This document shows, one piece after another, positions 4,552 through 56,391 of a DNA stretch of 56,548 bases. Source of the stretch: Guillardia theta CCMP2712 (taxonomy: Eukaryota > Protista > Cryptophyta). The position numbers and the translations under genes are program-made. Position 1 is the first letter of the stretch. Every line of letters begins with the position of its first letter. The stretch covers positions 1-56,548 of the forward strand of contig NW_005434651.1 in the NCBI RefSeq assembly GCF_000315625.1, read 5' to 3'. The notes under the pieces are model-generated. The model worked only from the letters and a program-made list of their open reading frames with translations, ran no database searches and was not told where the DNA came from.

Positions 4552-6372
4552 TCATTCGTTACTGTTCCCAGGATTCCTACGAGGGAGAGCGCCGTTTCTA
4601 AGGAATTTATTCAAAGCAATGAAGAGAAGGTCAGTTTTCAAGGGCTTCTCCTCATTTGGTGCGAAAGCGCTGCTCTTTCGTTTCGCTACCTTCCACGTAT
4701 GCTTGCCTGCAATCATCCTGACTCGTTCGCGCAGTTGTTTGCTCACGGCATTCTCTGCCGCGTTGGCACCCTTACCAGCCCACTCTTGTAGCGTGGGGAA
4801 GGATGCATTTCCTGGGCTCTCCGGAGCCATCTCTTGCACCGCGTCATCAAGATGGAGTTGAAGCTGCCCTTGCTGTTGCAGCTCGCTCCTAGTTACGTCA
4901 GCAATAGTTTCCTTAAGTTCTTCGACGACCACGTCCGTTCCCGCATCTGGGAGGTTGGTCTCGTTGATAATTGAACTGAGCTCGATCTCTTTCCACACAG
5001 TTCCCTCTGCTCTGGTCCCCGTCGTTTGTGACCTGGCCTCAGGGTTAGACTGATCGCGAGTTGCCTGAGGCGACACTTTGAGGTTCAGACTGCTCGCTGT
5101 CGTTTGGATTTCAACTGTGCCTTGCCAGCAGAGGAGCTGTGTGGGGAATTCAGCCATCATCTTTCTTGCACTACTTTCACTGCGTAGCCGGAGAATGATA
5201 CCAGACCCATCCCAGATCCCTGTTTCTGGATCGCATTGAAGGTGGATCCGTTGGAGATCTCTCTCCACCTGTGGATCAAAGCAAGCGACAGCTCTCCGAA
5301 TGTTTCGGATGACTTTTGCTCTGCCCGTTTCGTCACTTGCACAGATTTTTTCGATCTCATTTCGGGAGAACTTCCCTGACGGCACAGGAGAGGAGATTTG
5401 TACCGAGTACAGCATCTCTGCTCCCGTTGCCATTGCCGTGCCCTCTTGTCGCACCGCATTCTTCATATTCTTGTGCAGCGCCGTTGCTTCCATCTGCACT
5501 GAGAACCATTTCAGTATTTTGTCATTCTCTGAGACCAGTCCCAAAGTGACTCCTGCACGATCCTTTCCATGTCGATCGAATGCTTGAAGAACGATGTCCG
5601 CTGCTTCAAGGCTCGAGCACGTTGCGATCCAGTCGACCTCTCTGTTCTGGTTGACTGTTTCTATTCCTACCGCAGCGAACACCTTCTTTGGCGGTAGGTT
5701 CCTCTTGGGGGGGAGGTTCACTGTCATTCCCGCGTTTGGGATCAGATCAATGATCGCTAATCCCTGCTTCAGGCATAGCTGCCTGTAGATCTCACATATG
5801 TCACCTGTGCTCGAATCGTTGAGCATCAGGAGTTGGGCCACCTCAGCTAGGATTCCAACTCTGCTCATGTTCTCCTTCTTTGGCCGCATCTTGAACGAGA
5901 TCGGTGGGTTGGCTGCTGGGTTCACTGCTAGAATCCTCCTGCCTGCCACCTTGAAGGTACCTTCTCCTTTCCAGAGTTTCTCAGCCGCCTCATTGCGGAC
6001 AAAGGTGATCACTGCTGGGATCTCCGCTGCCTGCACAAGGTCAGGCTTCAAGGGAGCCTTGAAGATCAGGCTCCTGCTGTCTTGCGTCTGATCGACGATC
6101 AAGCCTTGCTCTTCAAGCTTGAGGCATAAGTTTTCCACCTGTCTGGAAAAGTATGCAGGGATCCCAAGTACCTTCATGGTAATCGTCTGCACATTGGTGC
6201 CCTGATCATCATATGATCTGGCCTCCATCTGCCTTTGTCTGTCAGCTTGGAACTCTGACAGGTACCACTGCTTGACATCGTCACCCCACTGCCTGAGCCC
6301 TTTCGGATTCTCCAGTGACGAGGGTTCAGCGAAGCTGCATGTCTGACTGATGGCTTCGGCTAAGGCTTCCAA
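4552..6372 (-). CDS. LINE ORF1-like protein (5' end probably incomplete at the gap)
   Basis: 606-aa intronless ORF directly upstream of, and co-oriented with, ORF2; no motif confidently recognised. Confidence 0.7.
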   Translation of the reverse strand: MEALAEAISQTCSFAEPSSLENPKGLRQWGDDVKQWYLSEFQADRQRQMEARSYDDQGTNVQTITMKVLGIPAYFSRQVENLCLKLEEQGLIVDQTQDSRSLIFKAPLKPDLVQAAEIPAVITFVRNEAAEKLWKGEGTFKVAGRRILAVNPAANPPISFKMRPKKENMSRVGILAEVAQLLMLNDSSTGDICEIYRQLCLKQGLAIIDLIPNAGMTVNLPPKRNLPPKKVFAAVGIETVNQNREVDWIATCSSLEAADIVLQAFDRHGKDRAGVTLGLVSENDKILKWFSVQMEATALHKNMKNAVRQEGTAMATGAEMLYSVQISSPVPSGKFSRNEIEKICASDETGRAKVIRNIRRAVACFDPQVERDLQRIHLQCDPETGIWDGSGIILRLRSESSARKMMAEFPTQLLCWQGTVEIQTTASSLNLKVSPQATRDQSNPEARSQTTGTRAEGTVWKEIELSSIINETNLPDAGTDVVVEELKETIADVTRSELQQQGQLQLHLDDAVQEMAPESPGNASFPTLQEWAGKGANAAENAVSKQLRERVRMIAGKHTWKVAKRKSSAFAPNEEKPLKTDLLFIALNKFLRNGALPRRNPGNSNE

Positions 6373-6402
6373 GAAACGAATCCTTTAATGGCGGTACTAA
6401 AC

Positions 6403-6502
6403 NNNNNNNNNNNNNNNNNNNNNNNNNNNNNNNNNNNNNNNNNNNNNNNNNNNNNNNNNNNNNNNNNNNNNNNNNNNNNNNNNNNNNNNNNNNNNNNNNN
6501 NN
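6403..6502. other. Assembly gap (100 N)
   Basis: Run of N characters. Confidence 1.
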
Positions 6503-6539
6503 TCTCCACCTACCCCACCCTCTGTTCTCAACCTCCGCA

Positions 6540-9500
6540 ATGCCGTACAACTGCGACAAATGCCAGGCAAGGAGCAGCAGCGATGAGATGCTGTTACCTT
6601 GAGTTACATGTTTGATGATGGAGATGTTTCCTTTGCTCCCCCGCATCTGATCCTTCCATCATTCAACTCCTTTCTTGGCGGCTCCTTCACTTCCTCATAA
6701 CACTTTTTTGACCTTCTGACTTGTGTTTCTCCAGATCGTGATCGAAGATGATACCAACGACAGCTTAAAATGCGTAATTTGAATAGCTTCCAGTAGGCGT
6801 CACCTGACTTTGAGTGTTTTACGTTCTGCCGTGAATTGCAATGTTGTTATTCGGAAGGCGGTAAGCATCAGTCTGTGCAGCATATGCTCAGGGGACGATA
6901 GACTGACATGTATTTTGCAAATTCCTGGTTTTCCCTTGGTTGCATGGATTAAATTCGTCTTCATAGACTGTAAGTGTCATATCATATGATGCGCTCAGGG
7001 GATGATTGGCTGACATGTATTTTGCAAATCCCTGGTTTTTCCTTGCTTGCATGGATTAAATTCGTCTTCATAGGGAGTAAGTGTCATATCATAATGATGT
7101 GCTCAGGGAACGATTCGCTGACATGATTTTGCAAATCTGAATCGCTTTTTTATTCGGATGGATGTAATGGGGCTGGATAGACGGTAAGTGACGCTTATGA
7201 AATATGCTCTCAAGGGATGATTGGCTGACATTTCATTTTGCAAATTCTTTTGCTCTTGCTCGGATGGGTGCAACTTGGGCCCAATAGCATGTAAGTCGCA
7301 TATGCTACAATGCGGTCAGGGGACGATTGGACTGACAATTTTTGCTTTTTATTCCGGGTTTTTCATCGGATGGGTTGTTGATTTTTCCGGTCAGCCGGTA
7401 AGCGATGATTATGAAATATGCGGTCAGAGGATGATTGGACTGACATTTTCGTTTGTGTATATGTCGGTATTTGCTCGAATGTACTGTGGATGGCGCGGTA
7501 TAGTCGGTAAGTGACGATGATGAAAGATGTGGTCAGGGAACGATTGGCTGACATGTGTTTTTCAATCTCATCGCTTTTTTTGCTGGGATGGATGGAATGG
7601 GGCTGGATAGGTTGTAAGTGACGAATATGAAATGATGCACTCAGGGATCGATTGGATTGATACTCTACAATAGGCTACTTTTCAAGCTGGAGCCGAAGGA
7701 AAGTGCAAGATCTGTTCGAAGCTTGAAAAAGATCATCATGGATCTTCCAAGTACTGCTACGTAAGGAACTGTTCGTTCAGGGGTTGATTGGACTGACATG
7801 TATTTTGCAAATTCCTGGTTTTTCCTTGCTTGCATGGATTAAATTCGTCTTCATAGGGAGTAAGTGTCATATCATATGATGCGGTCAGGAAACGATTGGG
7901 CTGACATAGTCTTGTGTTTTTTCAATTTCTACTGTTTCATGGCTTGTTTGGATTGAATCTTTCTTCAAAGGGAGTAAGTAGCATATGCAATGATGCGGTC
8001 AGGGAACGATAGGCTGACATGTATTTTGCAAATCCCTGGTTTTTCCTTGCTTACATGGATTAAATTCGTCTTTATAGCGCGTAAGTGTCATATCATATGA
8101 TGCGCTCAGAGAATGATTGGCTGACATGTATTTTGCCGTTCGGGTCTTTGCTGGCATGCTCTGGATTGCGGCTGTTTTTTTTCTAGTGCTGCGTTTGCTA
8201 CTACGACGATGAATCTGAAGATCGAAGGCAAGAACGCATGTGCCAGCACTGCAAGGATCGACGTTCCTGCGTGCACAACCTTGAGCAAGATCTTGTATCG
8301 TCAAGACCCAGTAGGCAGGACGCCATCGCCAAGATCGAGAAGGTCCGCGAGCACGTCAACAACGTGGGGAAGCCATTTGCCCAGAGACTGGACCTAGTCA
8401 AGTGCCACTATATCTTCGGGATGCAAGAGATAGATACCTCTGCTGTCGAAGACGTGAAGCAGCTCCTGTCGGGCGGGGAGCTTGGGAGCTGCTACAACAG
8501 CGAGGAAGGCACGCTCAACATGTCTTTGCGGACAGATAGGATGAAACGATATGTGATACGAGACCTGAGGATGAAGAGCCTGCCTCGCTGGATCTCCGAG
8601 CTCGGCGTCGCTTTTAAAGTCATCGACGTGTCCGGTAACCCCAGCCTCTCCCGCCTTCCCTTGGACGAGCTCTGCAGCATGGAGTCTAGCCTGCAGGAGG
8701 TCAAGTGTAAGAGCTGCGTCAGCCTGCAGCTGCCTCCCCCTGAGATCGCCAGTCAGGGAGGGGCAGCTGCTTTCACGTACCTGCAGAGTGTCAAGAGAGA
8801 CAGCGAGGCGAACAAGCGGATCAACCTCATCCTCATAGGCAACGGAGAGGCAGGCAAGACGAGCGTGCTGAGAGCTCTGAGGTCAGACAAGGACAAGGCG
8901 GACAAGATCGAGGTAGACAGGAGGACGATCGGGATAGACCTGCACGAGTGGAAGCCTGATTACGCTGACGGGCTGACGTTTGACGTGATAGACTTCGGGG
9001 GGCAGCAGATCTACGCCAAGACCAACCAGTACTTCATCGTGAGGCGGGCCTTGTACCTGCTGGTTTGGAGCGTGAGGGTGAAGCGAGACAAAGAGAGCAA
9101 AGAGGATGGAGGGGGAGGCATGGAGGAGCTGAAGAAGATGATCTCGACATGGCTGCGAGCTACGCAAGCGCGAGTGCCGGGAGCGAGTGTGTTGCTCGTA
9201 GTAACGCACATCGATCTTGCCGGGGAGAGCGAGGTGACGGATCAGTGTGAGAAGGTGAAGGCATGTGTGGAAGAGGAGCTGAAGAAGATGGCAGAGGAGG
9301 AAGACGAGAACATCCTGCCGTTGCACGTTATCAATGGAGGCGAGAGCTTCCGGGTGAACTGTCTTGAGGGACAGGGAGTGAAGGAGCTGCGGCAATCTGT
9401 GTGCAAGACTGCAAAAGAGCTGCTGTGGTGGCAGGAAAAAATCCCTGGACCTTATCTGAGACTGAGAGAGGCTGTGGAGAAGCGTAAGTCAGAACCTGTC

Positions 9501-12113
9501 TCGTACGTCAAGGTAGAGGAGTACAAGGAGATGTTGAGAGAGTCAGGGGTCAACGAAAAGGAGCAAAAGGTGGCAACGAGCTTCTTGCACGACATGGGCG
9601 TGCTCAAGTACTTCGGTCATGAGCTGAGTGCGGATGAAAGCAAGAGAGACCAAGGCAAGTACTCCGTCGAGGACACGGTCTTTATCGATCCCGTGTGGAT
9701 GATCGACGTGTTCAAGGGCGTGATGCGACATGACTGGGAGCACCTACTCGACTGCTTCCAGCAGGACCCAACCAAGTCCAAGAAGACGAAGAAGCTGCTA
9801 CACCTGGGTATCATAGACGAGGACATGTTGGAGTACCTGTGGCCCCAGCAAGACAGCGACTTCTGGCGCAATGCGAAGACAGACAAGACATCAAGATCGG
9901 AAGAGGTAGGCTTCATCAAGCGCCATGTGGAGGTGCAGGAGGCGGTGGCTCTGCTTCGGGGCTGCGATCTGGCGCACTTCCTGGGCGTGGGGATGAAGGA
10001 CTTGAAGGATACAGACAACAAGAGCAGAGAGCTGCTGTGTCCCGGCATCATCCCGTCGTTCACGCATGAGCACAAGCGGGCAGTGACGGACAAGGACAAG
10101 CAGTCTCTATGCGCATCTGTGGAGTGCGAGTACAACATCTTCCCCGCAGGCTTCATCGACAGGCTGGTCGTGCTGTGCGCTGCTCGACACTTTGAGGTAG
10201 ACTGCAGCGGCTCTATGGCGGTGATGAAGGGCTGGGGCCGGACGCTGCTGGTGAGCTGGCGGGAAGACAATGACAAGCACGTGCTGAGAGCTGACGCGTC
10301 GACGAGGCAGCAGATCGAGAACTTGCAAGAGGACTTGAGGCGACTCGAGGCGTTCTTCCCGGGGATGAAGCGAAGGAGAAGCAACGAGGAGAGCTCAGGC
10401 AAGGAGGCCGTGCAGGTTGGGATCTTCACGCAAGGAGAGAGGTCAAGAGCATGTGGGCTGGATATTGAAAGAAAGGTGAAGGAGCTTTACGAGGCGGAGA
10501 ACCTCCCTCTAGGTCTTACTTGTCAGATTCATCCATGTGACGAACGTGGAGATGCTGGTGATGAATGTCTCGTGAACATCTTGTGTATATCGACAGAGTG
10601 TGTTGATGAGCAGGGAGCCATGCAAGGAGAAAGTAGCTTCAGCAAGCCATGGAACAGATTGACAGCTAGCAAAGCAATTATCATCCCCGTCGTATTGACA
10701 GACTACTACGACAAGCACATCAAGCCGAGGAACAGGTTCAACGAGTGGTGGCCGCAGGAGATACAAGGGATGGAGCGATACAGGATCTTCCATCAGTACA
10801 AGAAGAAAGATGAAGTATCGAAAGACAAAGTATCCGAATATGAAAAATCTATGCGAACGTTGTACGACGGCATCATCAAGAAGCTTCATCAGGGACGGGG
10901 AAGCTTCGAAGACTTGTACGATGTCACCAGTCAGAACGAGCTTCTGTGCCAAGCTTGCTTGCATGATAGGTCTGAGTCTCAACCTGCCTCACAAGGCGTT
11001 AGAGCCGTGGGCAGGTTCGATCCGTCGGAGATCAAGGAAGCACTGGACAAAGAAACCAATGGTATGACAGACATGCAGCAAGAGCTGGAGCAAGAAGATG
11101 TCATCAAACAAACGATCATGATCAAAGCAATCACTTGCACAAGGGGTCATACGACAACCGTGAAGGAGGTGCTGGCTTTCAATGACTCGAGCTCCCCGTG
11201 TCCGTCGTGCTTGAAGGACAAGAGAGTCCCGCACTTCTTCAGCCGACCCACGTGCTTGAGCATGCTCGCTCGCGATCTAACGGCTAAGATTTACTGCAAT
11301 CAATGTCAGAGGGAGATGGACGTGCTGGACGTCACGCCGCCTCAGGTGTTCTTGAGCTACAATTGGGGGCACGACAACTCGACGCAGAAGATGGTGAGGG
11401 AGGTGAAGCGGCGGATCGAAGAGCAGACGAGCCTGCAGTGCTGGTTCGACGTGGAGGGAGGGATCGACCACGGGGAAGATCACATGCAGAAGATGGAGCA
11501 GGGAGTGTCTCGCTGCGAGGTGTTTGTGGTCTTCATGAGCGACAAGTACGTTAAGAGCGGCAACTGCAGGAGGGAGTTTGCTCGGGCGTGTAAGGCAGGG
11601 AAGTACATCATCCCTGTCTTGGTGCCGGTGCTGTATGAAGCAAGTCCAGACTCAAAGGACTTGGAGTCAGAGTCAGGCTGGAAGGGCGACAAGGAGGGTG
11701 AAGACTGGTGGAAGAGAATTGCGGAGCTAGAGGAGACAAGTGAAGCTGCCAAAGAGGTCAAGGTCGACTGGGAGTTTCTCGCGTCATTCTCGAAGCCCTT
11801 GAAGATTGAAGCGAAGAGGGAGCAGCAAGAACAACAGCAGAAAGAGAAGGACCATGGTGGTTTGCATGTGTCAGGGCTGGAGGCGCTGGTGGCAGCAGTG
11901 CAAGCGAGGGTTTACCGGGGAGGCGTCGTATTTCACGAGGTTGCTTGTTTCCTTGTGGTTGACATGGCCTTGACATGCGTGGGCCAGGTGGAGCACCCGT
12001 TTCTCAGGTCGTTACATCGTCAAAAGCGCCTGCTCGACAGCATTCTTGATCGTATCAGCCGGCTGCAGTCAAAGATACTGTTAGGGATTGACAACCCTGA
12101 TGATCTACCTTGA
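6540..12113 (+). CDS. ROCO-family GTPase with TIR domain: microexon-encoded Cys/His-rich N-terminus, LRR remnant, ROC, COR, Zn-finger-like region, TIR_2
   Basis: Main exon starts at 8187, in frame with ORF 8238-12113. It encodes an LRR-like stretch ending in the ROCO-typical LPPPEIASQGG, P-loop GNGEAGKTS, RTIGID, DFGGQ, THID, a COR region (FLHDMGVLKYF, VFIDPVWMIDVF), CxxC pairs, and TIR VFLSYNW..CWFD..FMSDKYVKSGNCRREF. Probable in-frame 48-nt intron at 11940-11987. Predicted upstream exons: 6540-6566 (tentative, GC donor), 6735-6773, eight 3-nt exons, 7674-7760, and three more 3-nt exons. Confidence 0.88.
6858..8186 (+). other. Array of eleven 3-nt microexons and one 87-nt exon separated by homologous introns
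   Basis: AG|NNN|GTAAG at GCG 6858-60, ACT 6967-69, GGA 7074-76, ACG 7181-83, CAT 7288-90, CCG 7395-97, TCG 7504-06, GTT 7611-13, GGA 7857-59, GGA 7971-73 and CGC 8078-80. The exon at 7674-7760 reads ATFQAGAEGKCKICSKLEKDHHGSSKYCY. All junctions are phase 0. Confidence 0.88.
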
Positions 12114-53462: not shown

Positions 53463-56391
53463 ATGCAAGCTCCGAGCATGCTTAGGTAGAAGCTTCATCT
53501 GCTCACCGCCTAGAGCTCCTCTCGAAGGAGCTGACGTGATGGCAGGTTGTCGGGGGACGGCGAGGTCTCGGACGAGGACCCTAACGGGCACGATCTCGGC
53601 TTCCTCTCTTTGTCTCAGGATATCCCAGCAACTGCCGAGCAACCTGCCATGGCAGGCGGTCAGAAACGACCGCGAAGCTCCTTGCAGGATGCGGTGCAGC
53701 CTATGAACGGCTTCAGCACGAACGCCGCGAACAACGCGAACACAGGTGCATGAAGAGACTGAGGGAGGGGCGGGAGGAGGAGGAGGAGGAGGAGGAGGAG
53801 GAGGAGAAAGACTTGACTATTTGATCTCCTTTTTTCGCAGGATTTGTGAACAAGTCGCATGAGAGGAGGTGAGACGAGATCAAAGAAGTCTTTAAGTTGC
53901 TGATTCTGTTGCTTGCAGTCCGTCCATCCTTACGGAAGACAGGAATGGAGTGAAGAGGCGGAGGGGTAAAGTTGTCTTCTCCTCTTCCTCGTGGCCTCAT
54001 GTCCTCTACAGGTCGACCAGTAGGATCAAAAGATCGCCAACCACGTGTGAAGCGCATGGTTGACACTCCTGAAAGTACGCAGACTGTCCTCCCTCCTCCC
54101 TCGCCCACTCCTGCCCTACTCCCTCTCTCTCTCCCTTCCTCGTTTTTCCACATCTGTCTTTAGCCTTCATATTCCGCCTCTTCCTTTCAATCTTTCCTCC
54201 GTCCTTTCTTCCTCTCCCCACACCCTTGCTGTTCTCCTCCTCAAAGTCTCCCACAGAGCAAGAGAGCGAGACGACGTCTGAGGCAGGAGTAAGGAAGAAG
54301 CCTTGGAAGATCATCCTCACAGCCGAGCAAGCCATCGAGATCTACCAGAAGAGGCCCAAGAGCGATTCTTCTCTTACCACCTCCAGCTGCCGTTCCAACG
54401 AGGTTTCTTCTTCTCTTTCCTCCTCCTTCGCCTTCTTCCTCTGTCTCCCCCCCCTCTCCTCCTCCTTCTCCTCGTCCTCCTCCTTACTCCCTCTTCTTCC
54501 GCCGCCTCCTACCAACATTCTCTTTCAGGTTGCCGAGCAATATGGGGTCAACTCTAAGACCATCAGGGACATCTGGAACAGGTCCAAACGCTGTTTCCCT
54601 TCTCCTCATCCCAAACACCATCCTCTTTTCTCTCGCCTTCCCTTCCACCTCCTGCTTTCTTTCTCCTTCCCTTGCCACCACCTCCTCTCTTTCTCATTCT
54701 CTTCCTCATGTTATGATTTCTTTCTTGCTCTCCTTTCCCTCTCGTTCCTCCGTCGGTGGGGCTAATGACAATATCAGGGCTACGTGGGTCAAGGCCACTC
54801 GAGAAGTTTGGACGGCAGAGGAAGAAGCCGAGTACGAGGAAGCGCAGATGTTTGAGAATCGGTTAGCCAACTCCTCTCCTCCTCCTCTCCTCCTCCTCCC
54901 TCGGTCTCTGGGTCTCTCGCTTTCCCTTAGTCCCTTGCACTCCTTCCTTCCCTTCGCTTCTCGTCTCTCTTCCCTTCCTTTTCTTCCGTGCTTCAAGCAC
55001 CTCTCCTCCTCTCCTCCTCTCCTCCTCTCCTCCTCTCCTCCTCGTTTTCATTCTTGTGTCTTCTCGTGACGAGCTTGCAGCGAGAGAAGCCAGGAGGCCT
55101 CAAGCGGCAGCAACACGGTGAGTCAACTTTTGCGCAGGGGGAGGGAGAGAGGAGGAGCTGAGGGTCCAGCAGACCCTGGAGCAAGATGGGAACAAGAGGG
55201 TCAGGGGACGACCCAAGGGAGCCAGAGACTCGCGTCCTCGGGGCAAGAAGAAGGTGGGAGGACGTCACTTCCTGCTTCTCTTCTCCTCACAGGCAGCGGC
55301 AGGACGGGTGGGAAGGAGCTGAGGGAAATGAATCCGAACAGCCCATGGTACTCAATATGAACCCTCCTGCTCACTCGGCGATGGCCGGACTGAATGTCAA
55401 TCGCCTGCTCTCCTACCATGAGTCGAGCCCCATGCCAAGGTGATTTCCTCCTTCCTCTTGCCCCTCTCCTCTGCTCTGCTCTGCTCCCCTCTCCTCTGCT
55501 CTCCCCTCGTCTCCCTGCCCTCCTCTTCAATTGACAACGAACTTTACAGCTTGGCGGCTCGGTCAGTCGGCAGCTCAACGACGTTGCAACAAAATAGCGA
55601 CAAGACGAGTTCGAATGCCTCCCATTCGCAGGTGCACAAACACCACCATCACATCACACCACCACCACCACCTCCTCCTTCCTCTTCCTGCTCCATCCTC
55701 CTCCTCCTCCCCTACTTCCTCCCTCCTCCTCCCCTACTTCCTCCCTCCTCCTCCCCCCCTCGCGTTTCACTATGTTCCGGTCTCCCAATCGTCTCCCCTC
55801 TTCTCCTCCCTTCCTTGCCCCTCTCATCTTTCTTTGCATGTTGCCTGCTGCTGACTGGGCACTTCCAGTCCTCTTCCTATCAATCTGACGAGAGTGCCAA
55901 TGGCTCCGGTATCTTCTTTCGCTTCCTCTTCCTCCTCCTCGCTCACCGCTTTCTCTTGCTCAGACGGCTCTGGCTCCGGAAGCTCTCCTCTTTTCCCCTT
56001 ACACGGGAGCAAGCGCTAGGTACCTTCATCCTCATCTTCACCTTTTCTCTTGCCTTCCCTCCTCCCCTCCCCTCCTGCTCTCCTCCTCCCCTTCTGCTCT
56101 CCTCCTCCTCGTGCTTCTCTTCTTTTCTTTGTTGCTGACGTTTCTATCCAAGGCAAGACGCGATGTTCTTTCCTCAGCAGCAGCAGCAGTTGGAGTTACG
56201 AACCCCCTATCCTGCTCCTCTACCTCCCGGTGAGCCTCCTTTCCTCCGGTCTAGCGAAGCTGACGAGCTTCCTTAGCAGCTCAGAGCAACCAAGCTCGTC
56301 CTCTGGATTTCCAGGCGCAACAAACCTGTCAGCTTCAACTCTTTTCTCTTCCTCTTCTCTCCTTTATTCCAACTTTATCATCATCTCCTCT

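What the first reader, a model, noticed from the sequence alone, without database searches (positions are those of the whole stretch)
6858..8186. Array of single-codon (3-nt) microexons building the N-terminus of a ROCO-TIR receptor
Seen: eleven times the sequence reads AG + exactly 3 nt + GTAAG (GCG, ACT, GGA, ACG, CAT, CCG, TCG, GTT; then an 87-nt exon; then GGA, GGA, CGC). The introns are 96-111 nt, except a 60-nt one before the 87-nt exon. All junctions are phase 0, no triplet is a stop, and the last acceptor (8186) lies 51 nt (17 sense codons) before the ATG of the 1291-aa ROCO-TIR ORF. Predicted product: ..IVIEDDTNDSLKC-A-T-G-T-H-P-S-V-ATFQAGAEGKCKICSKLEKDHHGSSKYCY-G-G-R-CCVCYYDDESEDRRQERMCQHC.. 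Inference: including or skipping any microexon keeps the frame, giving up to 2^11 = 2048 isoforms that vary two short loops residue by residue, at the position where ROCO proteins normally carry a ligand-sensing LRR array. Known analogues are LRR exon shuffling in brown-algal ROCO genes and Schistosoma micro-exon genes. I know of no described tandem array of one-codon exons, and standard gene finders and aligners would miss it.
Basis: partly seen in the sequence, partly recalled or inferred. Interest (0 to 1): 0.97.

Follow-up and report, generated by a model that had tools for sequence, protein, structure and literature searches.

The report
Arrays of spliced one-codon exons
In the alga Guillardia theta, a family of receptor-like genes builds part of its protein from runs of up to about twenty exons that are each one codon long; RNA data show these exons are really spliced together in order, which is not described in any paper found and which the public protein models of three sister genes miss.

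Summary
Window 6856-8085 holds eleven AG-NNN-GTAAG sites about 107 nt apart, against 4.5 expected by chance in the whole window.

RNA-like assemblies from two independent studies join the flanking exons with exactly the predicted triplets between them, all present and in genomic order. One contig carries ACT GGA ACG CAT CCG TCG GTT between 6860 and 7674. Two carry GGA GGA CGC between the 87-nt exon and 8187. A DNA-like run shows no such joints, and the first of these joined sequences (the only one searched for) is absent from the genome.

The genome is Guillardia theta (87 Mb). It has at least 22 further loci with the same architecture, with 5 to 21 one-codon exons each. Three of them have matching all-inclusive RNA strings.

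None of 224 triplets is a stop codon. A conserved ATG, a CxxC exon and Cys-rich 84/87-nt exons are all in phase 0, so the arrays are coding.

The introns are about 105 nt long. They have a GTAAGT donor, a CTGAC about 59 nt upstream of the acceptor and an AG-free zone between the two.

Only all-inclusive forms and partly spliced forms were seen, although contigs cannot exclude rare skipping.

No paper found describes this. First-stage notes of this scan had flagged the same thing on other DNA of this genome.

The parts
6541..6567 (+). Exon 1 (27 nt), start codon, encodes MPYNCDKCQ with a CxxC motif whose two middle residues vary between paralogs.
   Evidence: The ATG and its flanks are conserved in 11 of 12 paralogs. 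The exon is more variable than its intron. An RNA contig of the C228 paralog joins this exon to exon 2 (joint listed as 6554->6731 with CGTGATTG between, equal to the C228 sequence).
6568..6734 (+). Intron 1, GC-AG type (167 nt), with CTGAC 17 nt before the acceptor.
   Evidence: The spliced joint was seen for the C228 paralog.
6735..6773 (+). Exon 2 (39 nt), encodes IVIEDDTNDSLKC.
   Evidence: Conserved in all paralogs with 2-3 hypervariable codons.
6774..6857 (+). 84-nt intron (GTAATT...AAG). It is retained in the X1 contigs shown, and retention puts a TGA at 6780 in frame.
   Evidence: record 1, covers 6767-6860 without a break. The splice 6773->6858 is not among the joints displayed.
6858..6860 (+). 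One-codon exon 1, GCG (Ala). GCG opens the array at every locus where the array start was captured, except C92 (CGA) and C206 (ATG).
   Evidence: Use of its donor is shown by the joint 6860->7674.
6967..6969 (+). One-codon exon 2, ACT (Thr).
   Evidence: Present in an X1 contig (table 5c).
7074..7076 (+). One-codon exon 3, GGA (Gly).
7181..7183 (+). One-codon exon 4, ACG (Thr).
   Evidence: X2 record 18 has the intron before it retained and the following ones removed.
7288..7290 (+). One-codon exon 5, CAT (His).
   Evidence: Seen in X1 and X2 contigs.
7395..7397 (+). One-codon exon 6, CCG (Pro).
   Evidence: Seen in X1 and X2 contigs.
7504..7506 (+). One-codon exon 7, TCG (Ser).
   Evidence: Seen in X1 and X2 contigs.
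7611..7613 (+). One-codon exon 8, GTT (Val).
   Evidence: Seen in X1 and X2 contigs.
7674..7760 (+). 87-nt exon encoding a Cys/His module, ATFQAGAEGKCKICSKLEKDHHGSSKYCY.
   Evidence: homologous exons in paralogs. RNA depth and joints on both sides.
7857..7859 (+). One-codon exon 9, GGA (Gly).
   Evidence: Joint 7761->8187 with GAGGACGC between, in X1 and X2.
7971..7973 (+). One-codon exon 10, GGA (Gly).
8078..8080 (+). One-codon exon 11, CGC (Arg).
6861..8186 (+). Twelve homologous introns (60-111 nt, mostly 104-106) that separate the small exons. Each has GTAAGT, a conserved core around GATTGGCTGACA, an AG-free zone and a YAG acceptor.
8187..12113 (+). Last exon: CCVCYY... followed by Roc, COR-A and TIR domains.
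   Evidence: RNA depth is about 1e4 in X1.

Best explanation
Window 6541-12113 is one gene of Guillardia theta. Its N-terminal region is encoded by phase-0 exons only: 27 nt, 39 nt, eight exons of 3 nt, 87 nt, three exons of 3 nt, then the long ROC-COR-TIR exon. The one-codon exons are true exons. Each roughly 105-nt intron is removed on its own, and the dominant mRNA keeps every triplet in genomic order.

Shown here:
- The splice products.
- Partly spliced intermediates in no fixed order.
- The same architecture at 22 or more other loci.
- Freedom from stop codons.

Inferred mechanism of splicing: each intron is recognised as a unit (intron definition) through a near-perfect GTAAGT donor and a conserved branch-site block (..GATTGGCTGACA..) about 59 nt upstream of the acceptor. 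The acceptor is simply the first AG after an AG-free zone. The 3' splice site therefore needs no factor sitting on the 3-nt exon, and the branch-site complex is kept away from the next donor.

Inferred function: the triplets encode variable-length, variable-sequence linkers rich in Gly, Arg, Tyr, Ala and Asp. These lie between small Cys/His (CxxC..DH..C) modules of an N-terminal recognition region. That region is fused to TIR/ROCO in one subfamily and apparently to kinase-RING signalling domains in another, as in immune-type receptors.

Inferred evolution: the repeated intron-plus-codon unit lets unequal crossing-over and unit exchange add, drop or swap single codons without ever breaking the frame. 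Diversity arises between loci in the germline.
For: RNA evidence, all:
- X1 has exon depth around 1e4 and intron depth around 1e2, so it behaves as RNA. It has a contig joining 6860 to 7674 with ACTGGAACGCATCCGTCGGTT between.
- X1 and X2, from different studies, join 7761 to 8187 with GAGGACGC between.
- X2 record 18 has 7074-7183 unbroken, then CATCCGTCGGTT, then 7674.
- X12 has flat depth like DNA and shows none of these joints.

The joined microexon 1-8 sequence is absent from the 87-Mb genome at up to 2 mismatches.

Paralog arrays read from the genome match other RNA strings exactly:
- C184: ACG GAT CCG TCG GTG CGC AAT.
- C228: TCG GAA CAC TTC TCG TAT AAA CCG GGA.
- C150: GTT TAT GCG AAT TAT.

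Genome-wide, three sites in a row at 92-112 nt spacing occur 118 times against 9 in the reversed control.

Coding evidence:
- 0 stops in 183 triplets where 6.8% were expected from composition (P about 2e-6), and all 20 TAN triplets are TAY.
- Another 41 stop-free triplets come from diverged loci.
- The genome background for stop triplets at AGNNNGTAAG is 2.4%.
- The ATG and the exon phases are conserved.
- Exons 1-2 are 4-6 times more variable than their introns.

Intron anatomy, from 161 introns: median 105 nt, no 3n bias, CTGAC 59 nt from the acceptor, AG-free in 145 of 150.

The architecture is kept where intron sequence has diverged beyond alignment, at C116 and C92. A kinase-RING ORF lies about 500 nt downstream of the C206 array on the same strand.
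Against: - The splice that links exon 2 to the first triplet (6773->6858) is not among the joints displayed.
- The X1 contigs that carry the joined microexons have the 3' part of the 84-nt intron in front of them. Many RNAs in that sample are therefore unproductive or incompletely spliced, and translation of the array from the 6541 ATG is inferred from conservation, not shown.
- X1 and X2 are labelled only 'RNA? (a guess)'. Their RNA nature is inferred from depth contrast and spliced joints.
- Contigs cannot quantify isoforms.
- The branch point, intron definition, the role of the conserved core and the protein function are untested inferences.
- No peptide evidence exists.
- The apparent hypervariability of triplets against near-identical flanks shrinks under an unbiased test: the other flank is 73% identical and the triplet 46-77%.
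Confidence: 0.8

Rival explanations
1. Combinatorial alternative splicing. Each one-codon exon is independently included or skipped, which would give hundreds to thousands of in-frame receptor isoforms per locus.
For: All units are phase 0 and have near-identical splice signals, so any skip keeps the frame. Contigs drop rare variants, and 17 joints were not displayed. Partly spliced forms show that introns are removed independently of one another.
Against: Every joined contig displayed includes all triplets in order: 7, 4 and 3 at this locus, and 7, 9 and 4 at the paralogs C184, C228 and C150. A de Bruijn contig could not run through 21 nt of junctions if many isoforms were comparably abundant. 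No skipped form was listed.
Confidence: 0.1
2. The microexons are spliced as seen but are non-coding. The 84-nt intron is normally kept or transcription starts inside it, so the array lies in a 5' leader and translation starts at the ATG at 8238.
For: The X1 contigs carry 6767-6860 or at least 6831-6860 unbroken in front of the joined triplets, and retention gives an in-frame TGA at 6780. Hanusia phi transcript-derived proteins start close to the MCxHC motif. Public models P0002 and P0003 start at that Met.
Against: 0 stops in 224 triplets, and TAY only. All small exons are multiples of 3. There is a conserved upstream ATG with CxxC, and the codons vary faster than the introns. The 84-nt intron has GT..AG and a CTGAC, and it diverges like an intron in distant paralogs while the exon ends are kept. 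The Cys-rich modules are conserved at protein level.
Confidence: 0.07
3. The region is an intronic minisatellite. A 107-nt tandem repeat sits inside one long intron or untranscribed spacer, and its splice-like motifs are by-products of duplicating an intron end.
For: Tandem Repeats Finder and the repeat finder report a 107-nt tandem repeat with 78-89% matches. Recent block duplications exist, for example at C261.
Against: The triplets are present in RNA contigs in exact order. Stops are avoided. The architecture is kept at loci whose introns no longer align.
Confidence: 0.02
4. The spliced strings are an artefact: a retrocopy in DNA, reverse-transcriptase template switching between repeats, or a chimeric assembly.
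For: X1 and X2 are only guessed to be RNA. The region is repetitive, and many 'goes back' joints from paralogs occur.
Against: The joined sequence is absent from the genome. Template switching between 107-nt repeats would delete whole repeat units. It could not remove each 104-nt unit and leave every distinct triplet. The same result comes from two studies and four loci, all with GT..AG borders. The DNA-like run X12 lacks the joints.
Confidence: 0.01

Closest known systems
Micro-exon genes (MEGs) of Schistosoma mansoni
   Same: Much of the coding sequence is carried by tandem, symmetric (multiple-of-3) very small exons. Exons of 3-81 bp are reported (PMC10526429, seen as abstract only). The genes form a fast-evolving multigene family thought to act in recognition or evasion.
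   Different: MEG exons vary in size and are separated by long introns of up to 5 kb. MEG products are secreted, and variation by exon skipping is documented. Here there are uninterrupted runs of 5-21 exons of exactly 3 nt, short (about 105 nt) mutually homologous introns, no signal peptide evident at the N-terminus by eye (no predictor was run), fusion to ROCO/TIR and probably kinase/RING domains, and no skipping seen. The organism is a cryptophyte alga.
Single 3-nt microexons in animals, such as RPS24, MAP4K5, Drosophila homothorax and bee ELAV, and ultra-short plant microexons
   Same: An exon of 3 nt is recognised and included by the spliceosome and adds one residue (PMC7392893, PMC8632122, PMC11162997, PMC8831610, all seen as titles and abstracts).
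   Different: Those are isolated exons, or at most three mixed-size microexons in RPS24, flanked by normal exons and usually long introns. No tandem arrays are reported. The searches for tandem or consecutive microexon arrays returned only RPS24 papers and one plant gene-family paper.
Neural microexon splicing architecture in vertebrates
   Same: An extended distance between branch point and 3' splice site, and an accessible, unpaired region between them. That has been proposed to relieve steric constraints (PMC12871342 abstract). Here the CTGAC lies about 59 nt from the acceptor with an AG-free zone and no predicted structure.
   Different: Vertebrate microexons depend on SRRM4 and extended polypyrimidine tracts. 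Here the intron ends in front of microexons are G-rich (..GGCTGGATAG) or ..CGTCTTCATAG, and no regulator is known.
Exon shuffling of LRR exons in brown-algal ROCO and NB-ARC candidate immune receptors
   Same: A ROCO family whose putative recognition region is built from repeated symmetric exons with homologous introns and evolves by exon shuffling (PMC3341825, PMC11378527, abstracts).
   Different: The brown-algal unit is a whole LRR exon. Here the unit is a single codon, and the modules are Cys/His knuckles rather than LRRs.

Membership tests
Spliced 3-nt microexon | A 3-nt segment flanked by an AG acceptor and a GT donor. | tested here: met
   eleven AG-NNN-GTAAG sites.
Spliced 3-nt microexon | The segment is present in transcripts with both flanking introns removed. 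| tested here: met
   table 5c: 21, 12 and 8 letters between joints equal the triplets in order, in two studies; the joined microexon 1-8 sequence is not in the genome.
Micro-exon gene (MEG) architecture | A tandem series of symmetric micro-exons, each a multiple of 3 nt. | tested here: met
   exons of 27, 39, 3 (x8), 87 and 3 (x3) nt. Paralogs also have 6-, 36- and 84-nt exons.
Micro-exon gene (MEG) architecture | Long introns between micro-exons, and a secreted product with a signal peptide. | tested here: not met
   introns are 89-118 nt. The N-terminus MPYNCDKCQIVIEDD.. has no hydrophobic leader by eye, but no predictor was run.
Micro-exon gene (MEG) architecture | Protein variation generated by alternative inclusion of micro-exons. 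| tested here: inconclusive
   only all-inclusive and partly spliced contigs appear. Contigs cannot show rare isoforms, and the raw-read run X20 gave 18 reads.
ROCO protein | A Roc GTPase domain followed by COR. | tested here: met
   Roc E=6.7e-12 at residues 197-326, COR-A E=1e-10 at 403-539. COR-B is below its cutoff.
TIR-domain protein | A TIR domain above the Pfam gathering score. | tested here: met
   TIR_2 scores 62.8 bits against a cutoff of 28, at residues 1037-1142.
Introner or mobile intron family | Near-identical intron copies dispersed as single introns in unrelated genes. | tested here: inconclusive
   63 matches, and every locus inspected proved to be an array of this family. The search scores only the best candidates. 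Short isolated hits (C113, C269, C89) were not examined.
Recursive-splicing ratchet site | AG|GT juxtaposed with a zero-length exon that leaves nothing in the mRNA. | tested here: not met
   3 nt lie between AG and GT, and they stay in the RNA.

The most novel reading that the evidence does not exclude
Individual one-codon exons are skipped at low or condition-dependent frequency. Each of the 23 or more loci would then emit a repertoire of in-frame receptor isoforms that differ residue by residue, on top of the germline codon-by-codon shuffling between loci. That would amount to transcript-level diversification of an algal immune-type receptor.
Probability: 0.1. Interest if true: 0.97.

Novelty: new variant of a known kind. 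Interest (0 to 1): 0.9.

Why it matters
Runs of up to about 20 consecutive exons of exactly one codon, each with its own roughly 105-nt intron and all spliced in, sit at the physical limit of exon size. Exon-definition models cannot explain them.

They offer a natural system for asking how a spliceosome handles an acceptor and a donor only 3 nt apart. The arrangement seen here (strong donor, distant branch site, AG-free zone, no pyrimidine tract next to the exon) makes that directly testable.

They also show a way for a gene family to gain, lose and swap single residues without frameshifts. This happens in proteins whose domain sets (ROC-COR-TIR, and apparently kinase-RING) look like innate-immune receptors, in a lineage where nothing is known about immunity.

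On the practical side, the three public protein models inspected for sister genes lack this N-terminal region. RNA-seq aligners will not place such exons, so similar arrays may be hidden in other protist genomes.

Tried and rejected
- Raw RNA reads (X20): only 18 reads of 60 nt were laid. They were useless for counting isoforms, and read laying allows one call, so the 17 undisplayed joints could not be seen.
- A search for short transcript-derived proteins covering CCVCYY.. found no candidate. The full-length search found only genome models and Hanusia phi transcripts that start near MCxHC, so no independent spliced N-terminus was obtained.
- A metagenome scan for relatives found none, so conservation in other species is untested.
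Smaller fetches were used instead.
- The conserved intron core was tested as an RNA structure. RNAalifold gave no consensus structure for 161 introns, and the mean z-score was -0.13 over the first 60 of them. Rejected.
- Two AGNNNGTAAG hits at 54373 and 54483 on the minus strand lie in purine-rich low complexity, not in an array.
- Pfam on the 87-nt exon product and on the first 78 residues of the last exon gave nothing above threshold.
- The claim that the codon is hypervariable against near-identical flanks was checked. It is strong only when partners are picked on both flanks. With an unbiased choice it is moderate, and the units look mosaic.
- The minisatellite-in-intron, retrocopy and template-switch readings were rejected, as set out under the rival explanations.
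Full report
**1. Observation**

The sequence at 6400-8700 contains eleven AG-NNN-GTAAG sites on the + strand between 6856 and 8085. The whole window has 17 such sites against 4.5 +/- 2 in shuffles.
- The triplets are GCG ACT GGA ACG CAT CCG TCG GTT, then an 87-nt exon at 7674-7760, then GGA GGA CGC.
- The introns are 104-106 nt, except for ones of 60, 96 and 111 nt.
- The last acceptor is at 8186, and 51 in-frame nucleotides follow before the ATG at 8238.

The units form a roughly 107-nt tandem repeat. Their alignment shows GTAAGT, a conserved core around GATTGGCTGACA and a YAG end. The ORF at 8238-12113 carries Roc, COR-A and TIR domains.

**2. Organism**

The best protein hits are Guillardia theta CCMP2712 models, with paralogs at 90, 78 and 66% identity, followed by Hanusia phi transcripts. 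The window's assembly has 87.1 Mb in 669 contigs. Locus C92 encodes the N-terminus of model P0003 exactly, and its contig has the same length as the one on record for P0003. The genome is therefore the G. theta nuclear genome.

**3. RNA evidence**

This comes, the only read-laying run allowed.
- **X12** has flat depth of about 10 over exons and introns alike and shows no splice joints. It behaves as DNA.
- **X1** has depth around 1e4 on the last exon against around 1e2 on the introns. It behaves as RNA. X2, from another study, is similar.
- X1 has a contig that joins 6860 to 7674 (GT..AG) with ACTGGAACGCATCCGTCGGTT between the two sides. That is microexons 2-8, complete and in order.
- X1 and X2 both join 7761 to 8187 with GAGGACGC between. 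With the G at 7761 this reads GGA GGA CGC.
- X2 record 18 runs unbroken over 7074-7183, so one intron is retained. It then reads CATCCGTCGGTT and continues at 7674. This is a partly spliced molecule.
- Another X1 contig reads through ...GGA, then TTA, then an unspliced intron. It fits the C149 paralog, where GGA and TTA are neighbouring microexons.

Intron removal therefore follows no strict order.

The joined microexon 1-8 sequence does not occur in the genome at up to 2 mismatches. That excludes a retrocopy. Template switching between 107-nt repeats cannot explain the product either, because each distinct triplet is kept.

**4. The family**

A BLAST of the array against the genome gave 63 matches on about 20 contigs. 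Scanning those loci shows arrays of 5 to 21 one-codon exons:

| Locus | One-codon exons |
|---|---|
| C221 (gene of model P0001) | 21 |
| C308a | 19 |
| C70 | 19 |
| C234 | 14 |
| C228 | 14 |
| C116 | 15 or more |
| C92 | 11 |

Three sites in a row at 92-112 nt spacing occur 118 times in the genome, against 9 for the reversed-pattern control.

Strings seen as loose ends or joints match arrays read independently from the genome:
- C184: ACG GAT CCG TCG GTG CGC AAT.
- C228: TCG GAA CAC TTC TCG TAT AAA CCG GGA.
- C150: GTT TAT GCG AAT TAT.

At least 31 one-codon exons at four loci are thus seen in RNA, always all included.

**5. Coding or not**
- None of 183 unique triplets is a stop. Their own positional composition predicts 6.8%, which gives P of about 2e-6.
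- All 20 TAN triplets are TAT or TAC.
- Forty-one more triplets from diverged loci are also stop-free.
- The genome-wide background at AGNNNGTAAG is 206 of 8479, or 2.4%. That still gives P of about 0.004 for 0 of 224.
- Upstream, 11 of 12 paralogs share an ATG (6541 here) opening M-P-Y-N-C-x-x-C-Q. A GC-AG intron follows, then I-V-x-x-x-x-T-N-D-S-T-K-C, then an 84-nt GTAATT intron, then GCG.
- The GC-AG splice is seen in RNA for C228.
- Every small exon is a multiple of 3: 27, 39, 3, 87, 84, 6 and 36 nt.
- Among seven close paralogs, exons 1 and 2 are more variable than their introns. Nucleotide diversity is 0.138 and 0.099 for the exons against 0.028 and 0.020 for the introns. The changes concentrate in a few codons. 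This is the pattern expected of diversifying selection on a recognition surface.
- The triplets encode mostly Gly, Arg, Tyr, Ala, Asp, Leu, Pro, Ser, Val and Trp.

**6. Caveat on the 5' link**

The junction 6773->6858 is not among the 15 joints displayed; 17 were not shown. The X1 contigs that carry the joined triplets have the 3' part of the 84-nt intron in front of them (record 1 covers 6767-6860). Retention puts a TGA at 6780 in frame. The intron has a weak donor (GTAATT). It is conserved as an intron in distant paralogs, where its sequence diverges while the exon ends are kept. I read this as frequent retention or slow removal, but translation of the array from the 6541 ATG rests on conservation, not on RNA or peptide data.

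**7. Intron anatomy and likely mechanism**

The following comes from 161 unique array introns:
- The median length is 105 nt (range 89-118), with no bias to multiples of 3 (56/54/51).
- The donor is GTAAGT.
- CTGAC lies about 41 nt from the donor and about 59 nt from the acceptor.
- There is no AG between CTGAC and the acceptor in 145 of 150 introns.
- The last 10 nt are G-rich (..GGCTGGATAG) or ..CGTCTTCATAG.
- The intron in front of the long exon ends instead in a T-run (..CTGTTTTTTTTCTAG).
- In the ordinary GC-AG intron of the same gene, CTGAC lies only 17 nt before the acceptor.
- No consensus RNA structure or unusual stability was found.

Inference: each intron is recognised as a unit. 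The acceptor is chosen as the first AG downstream of a distant branch site. Nothing then has to bind on the 3-nt exon or beside the next donor. The same logic has been proposed for vertebrate neural microexons (PMC12871342).

**8. Evolution**
- Closely related genes have nearly identical flanking exons but quite different arrays. C23 has 8 + 3 triplets, and C149 has 2 + 10 with other codons.
- C261 carries a block (GCG CCA CTT plus Cys-rich exons) three times.
- When a unit's partner is chosen by one flank alone, the other flank is only 73% identical. The units are therefore mosaics.
- This fits unequal crossing-over and exchange between homologous introns, which changes the protein one codon at a time.
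- Loci with unalignable introns keep the architecture (C116, C92). It is therefore old and maintained, not a recent minisatellite.
- In a second subfamily (C206, C118, C234, C308a, C70, C261, C146) the array is followed by a 6-nt exon (TGCTGC or TGCTGT), an AAT exon and further Cys-rich exons. At most of these loci a coiled coil follows.
- Downstream was examined only at C206, where a TKL-type kinase plus RING ORF lies about 500 nt further on the same strand. That it belongs to the same gene is likely but not shown.

**9.

The microexons, their order, the predicted peptide and the claim that gene models miss them are all borne out:
- Model P0001 starts inside the last intron (MYFAIR).
- Models P0002 and P0003 start at the internal MCQHC.

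The 2^11-isoform idea is not borne out. Only all-inclusive and partly spliced forms were seen. Rare skipping cannot be excluded with contigs.

**10. Literature and the scan's own notes**

No paper in the library combines Guillardia with microexons. Searches for tandem or consecutive microexon arrays returned only RPS24 (three mixed-size microexons) and a plant gene-family paper. Single 3-nt exons are known. Schistosoma micro-exon genes are the nearest kind, followed by brown-algal ROCO exon shuffling. First-stage notes of this scan had flagged similar arrays on other pieces of this genome. They are unchecked and count as leads only.

**11. Verdict**

This is a real, RNA-supported and family-wide feature. 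It is best filed as a new and extreme variant of micro-exon gene architecture. Confidence by claim:

| Claim | Confidence |
|---|---|
| The 3-nt exons are spliced and included | about 0.95 |
| They are coding | about 0.85 |
| The proposed splicing mechanism | about 0.5 |
| The proposed evolutionary role | about 0.5 |
| Combinatorial skipping | about 0.1 |

Noticed in passing
window 6774-6857: The 84-nt GTAATT..AAG intron between exon 2 and the first triplet is retained in the X1 contigs that already have microexons 1-8 joined. Retention gives an in-frame TGA at 6780. This could be slow splicing or a regulated off-switch.
   Followed up: partly
concatenated triplets of all arrays (script): Reading frame +1 of the concatenated triplets is also stop-free (0 of 163, about 5 expected). 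Frame +2 has 9 stops, as expected. An ATG at 6841, inside the retained intron, would open this frame. This may be compositional chance.
   Followed up: partly
L032 (G000:C116:129300-131600): An array of at least 15 one-codon exons whose introns are purine-rich and no longer align with those of the window. It has the same exon 2 end (..AAATGC) and the same first triplet GCG.
   Followed up: partly
L031 (G000:C206:12000-18000) 456-1817: Downstream of the C206 array there is an exon encoding HGCRHCKK plus an E/Q/R-rich coiled coil. An ORF with a Tyr/Ser-Thr kinase domain (E=2e-67) and a C3HC4 RING follows. The same N-terminal cassette therefore appears to be fused to a different signalling module.
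   Followed up: partly
L020 (G000:C261:39189-42740): A block of three microexons (GCG CCA CTT) plus 84-nt Cys-rich exons occurs three times in tandem, with an assembly gap inside. This looks like recent segmental duplication within an array.
   Followed up: no
P0001, P0002, P0003 (public G. theta models): P0001 starts with MYFAIR, translated from inside the last array intron. P0002 and P0003 start at the internal Met of MCQHC. All three lack the N-terminal exons. No protein was returned for the window's own gene.
   Followed up: partly
window 6541-6773 and paralogs: Exons 1 and 2 are 4-6 times more variable than the introns around them among seven close paralogs. The changes are concentrated in the xx of CxxC and in 2-3 codons of exon 2.
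   Followed up: partly
window 8081-8186 versus 6861-8077: The intron in front of the long exon ends in a T-run. Introns in front of one-codon exons end G-rich (GGCTGGATAG) or CGTCTTCATAG, with no pyrimidine tract next to the AG.
   Followed up: partly
window 4552-6372 (-): A 606-aa ORF on the opposite strand lies just upstream of the gene and next to a 100-N assembly gap (6403-6502).
   Followed up: no
window 53900-55000 (-): A purine-rich low-complexity stretch (GGAGGA/GAAGGA runs) produces two chance AGNNNGTAAG matches 110 nt apart. It is not an array.
   Followed up: yes
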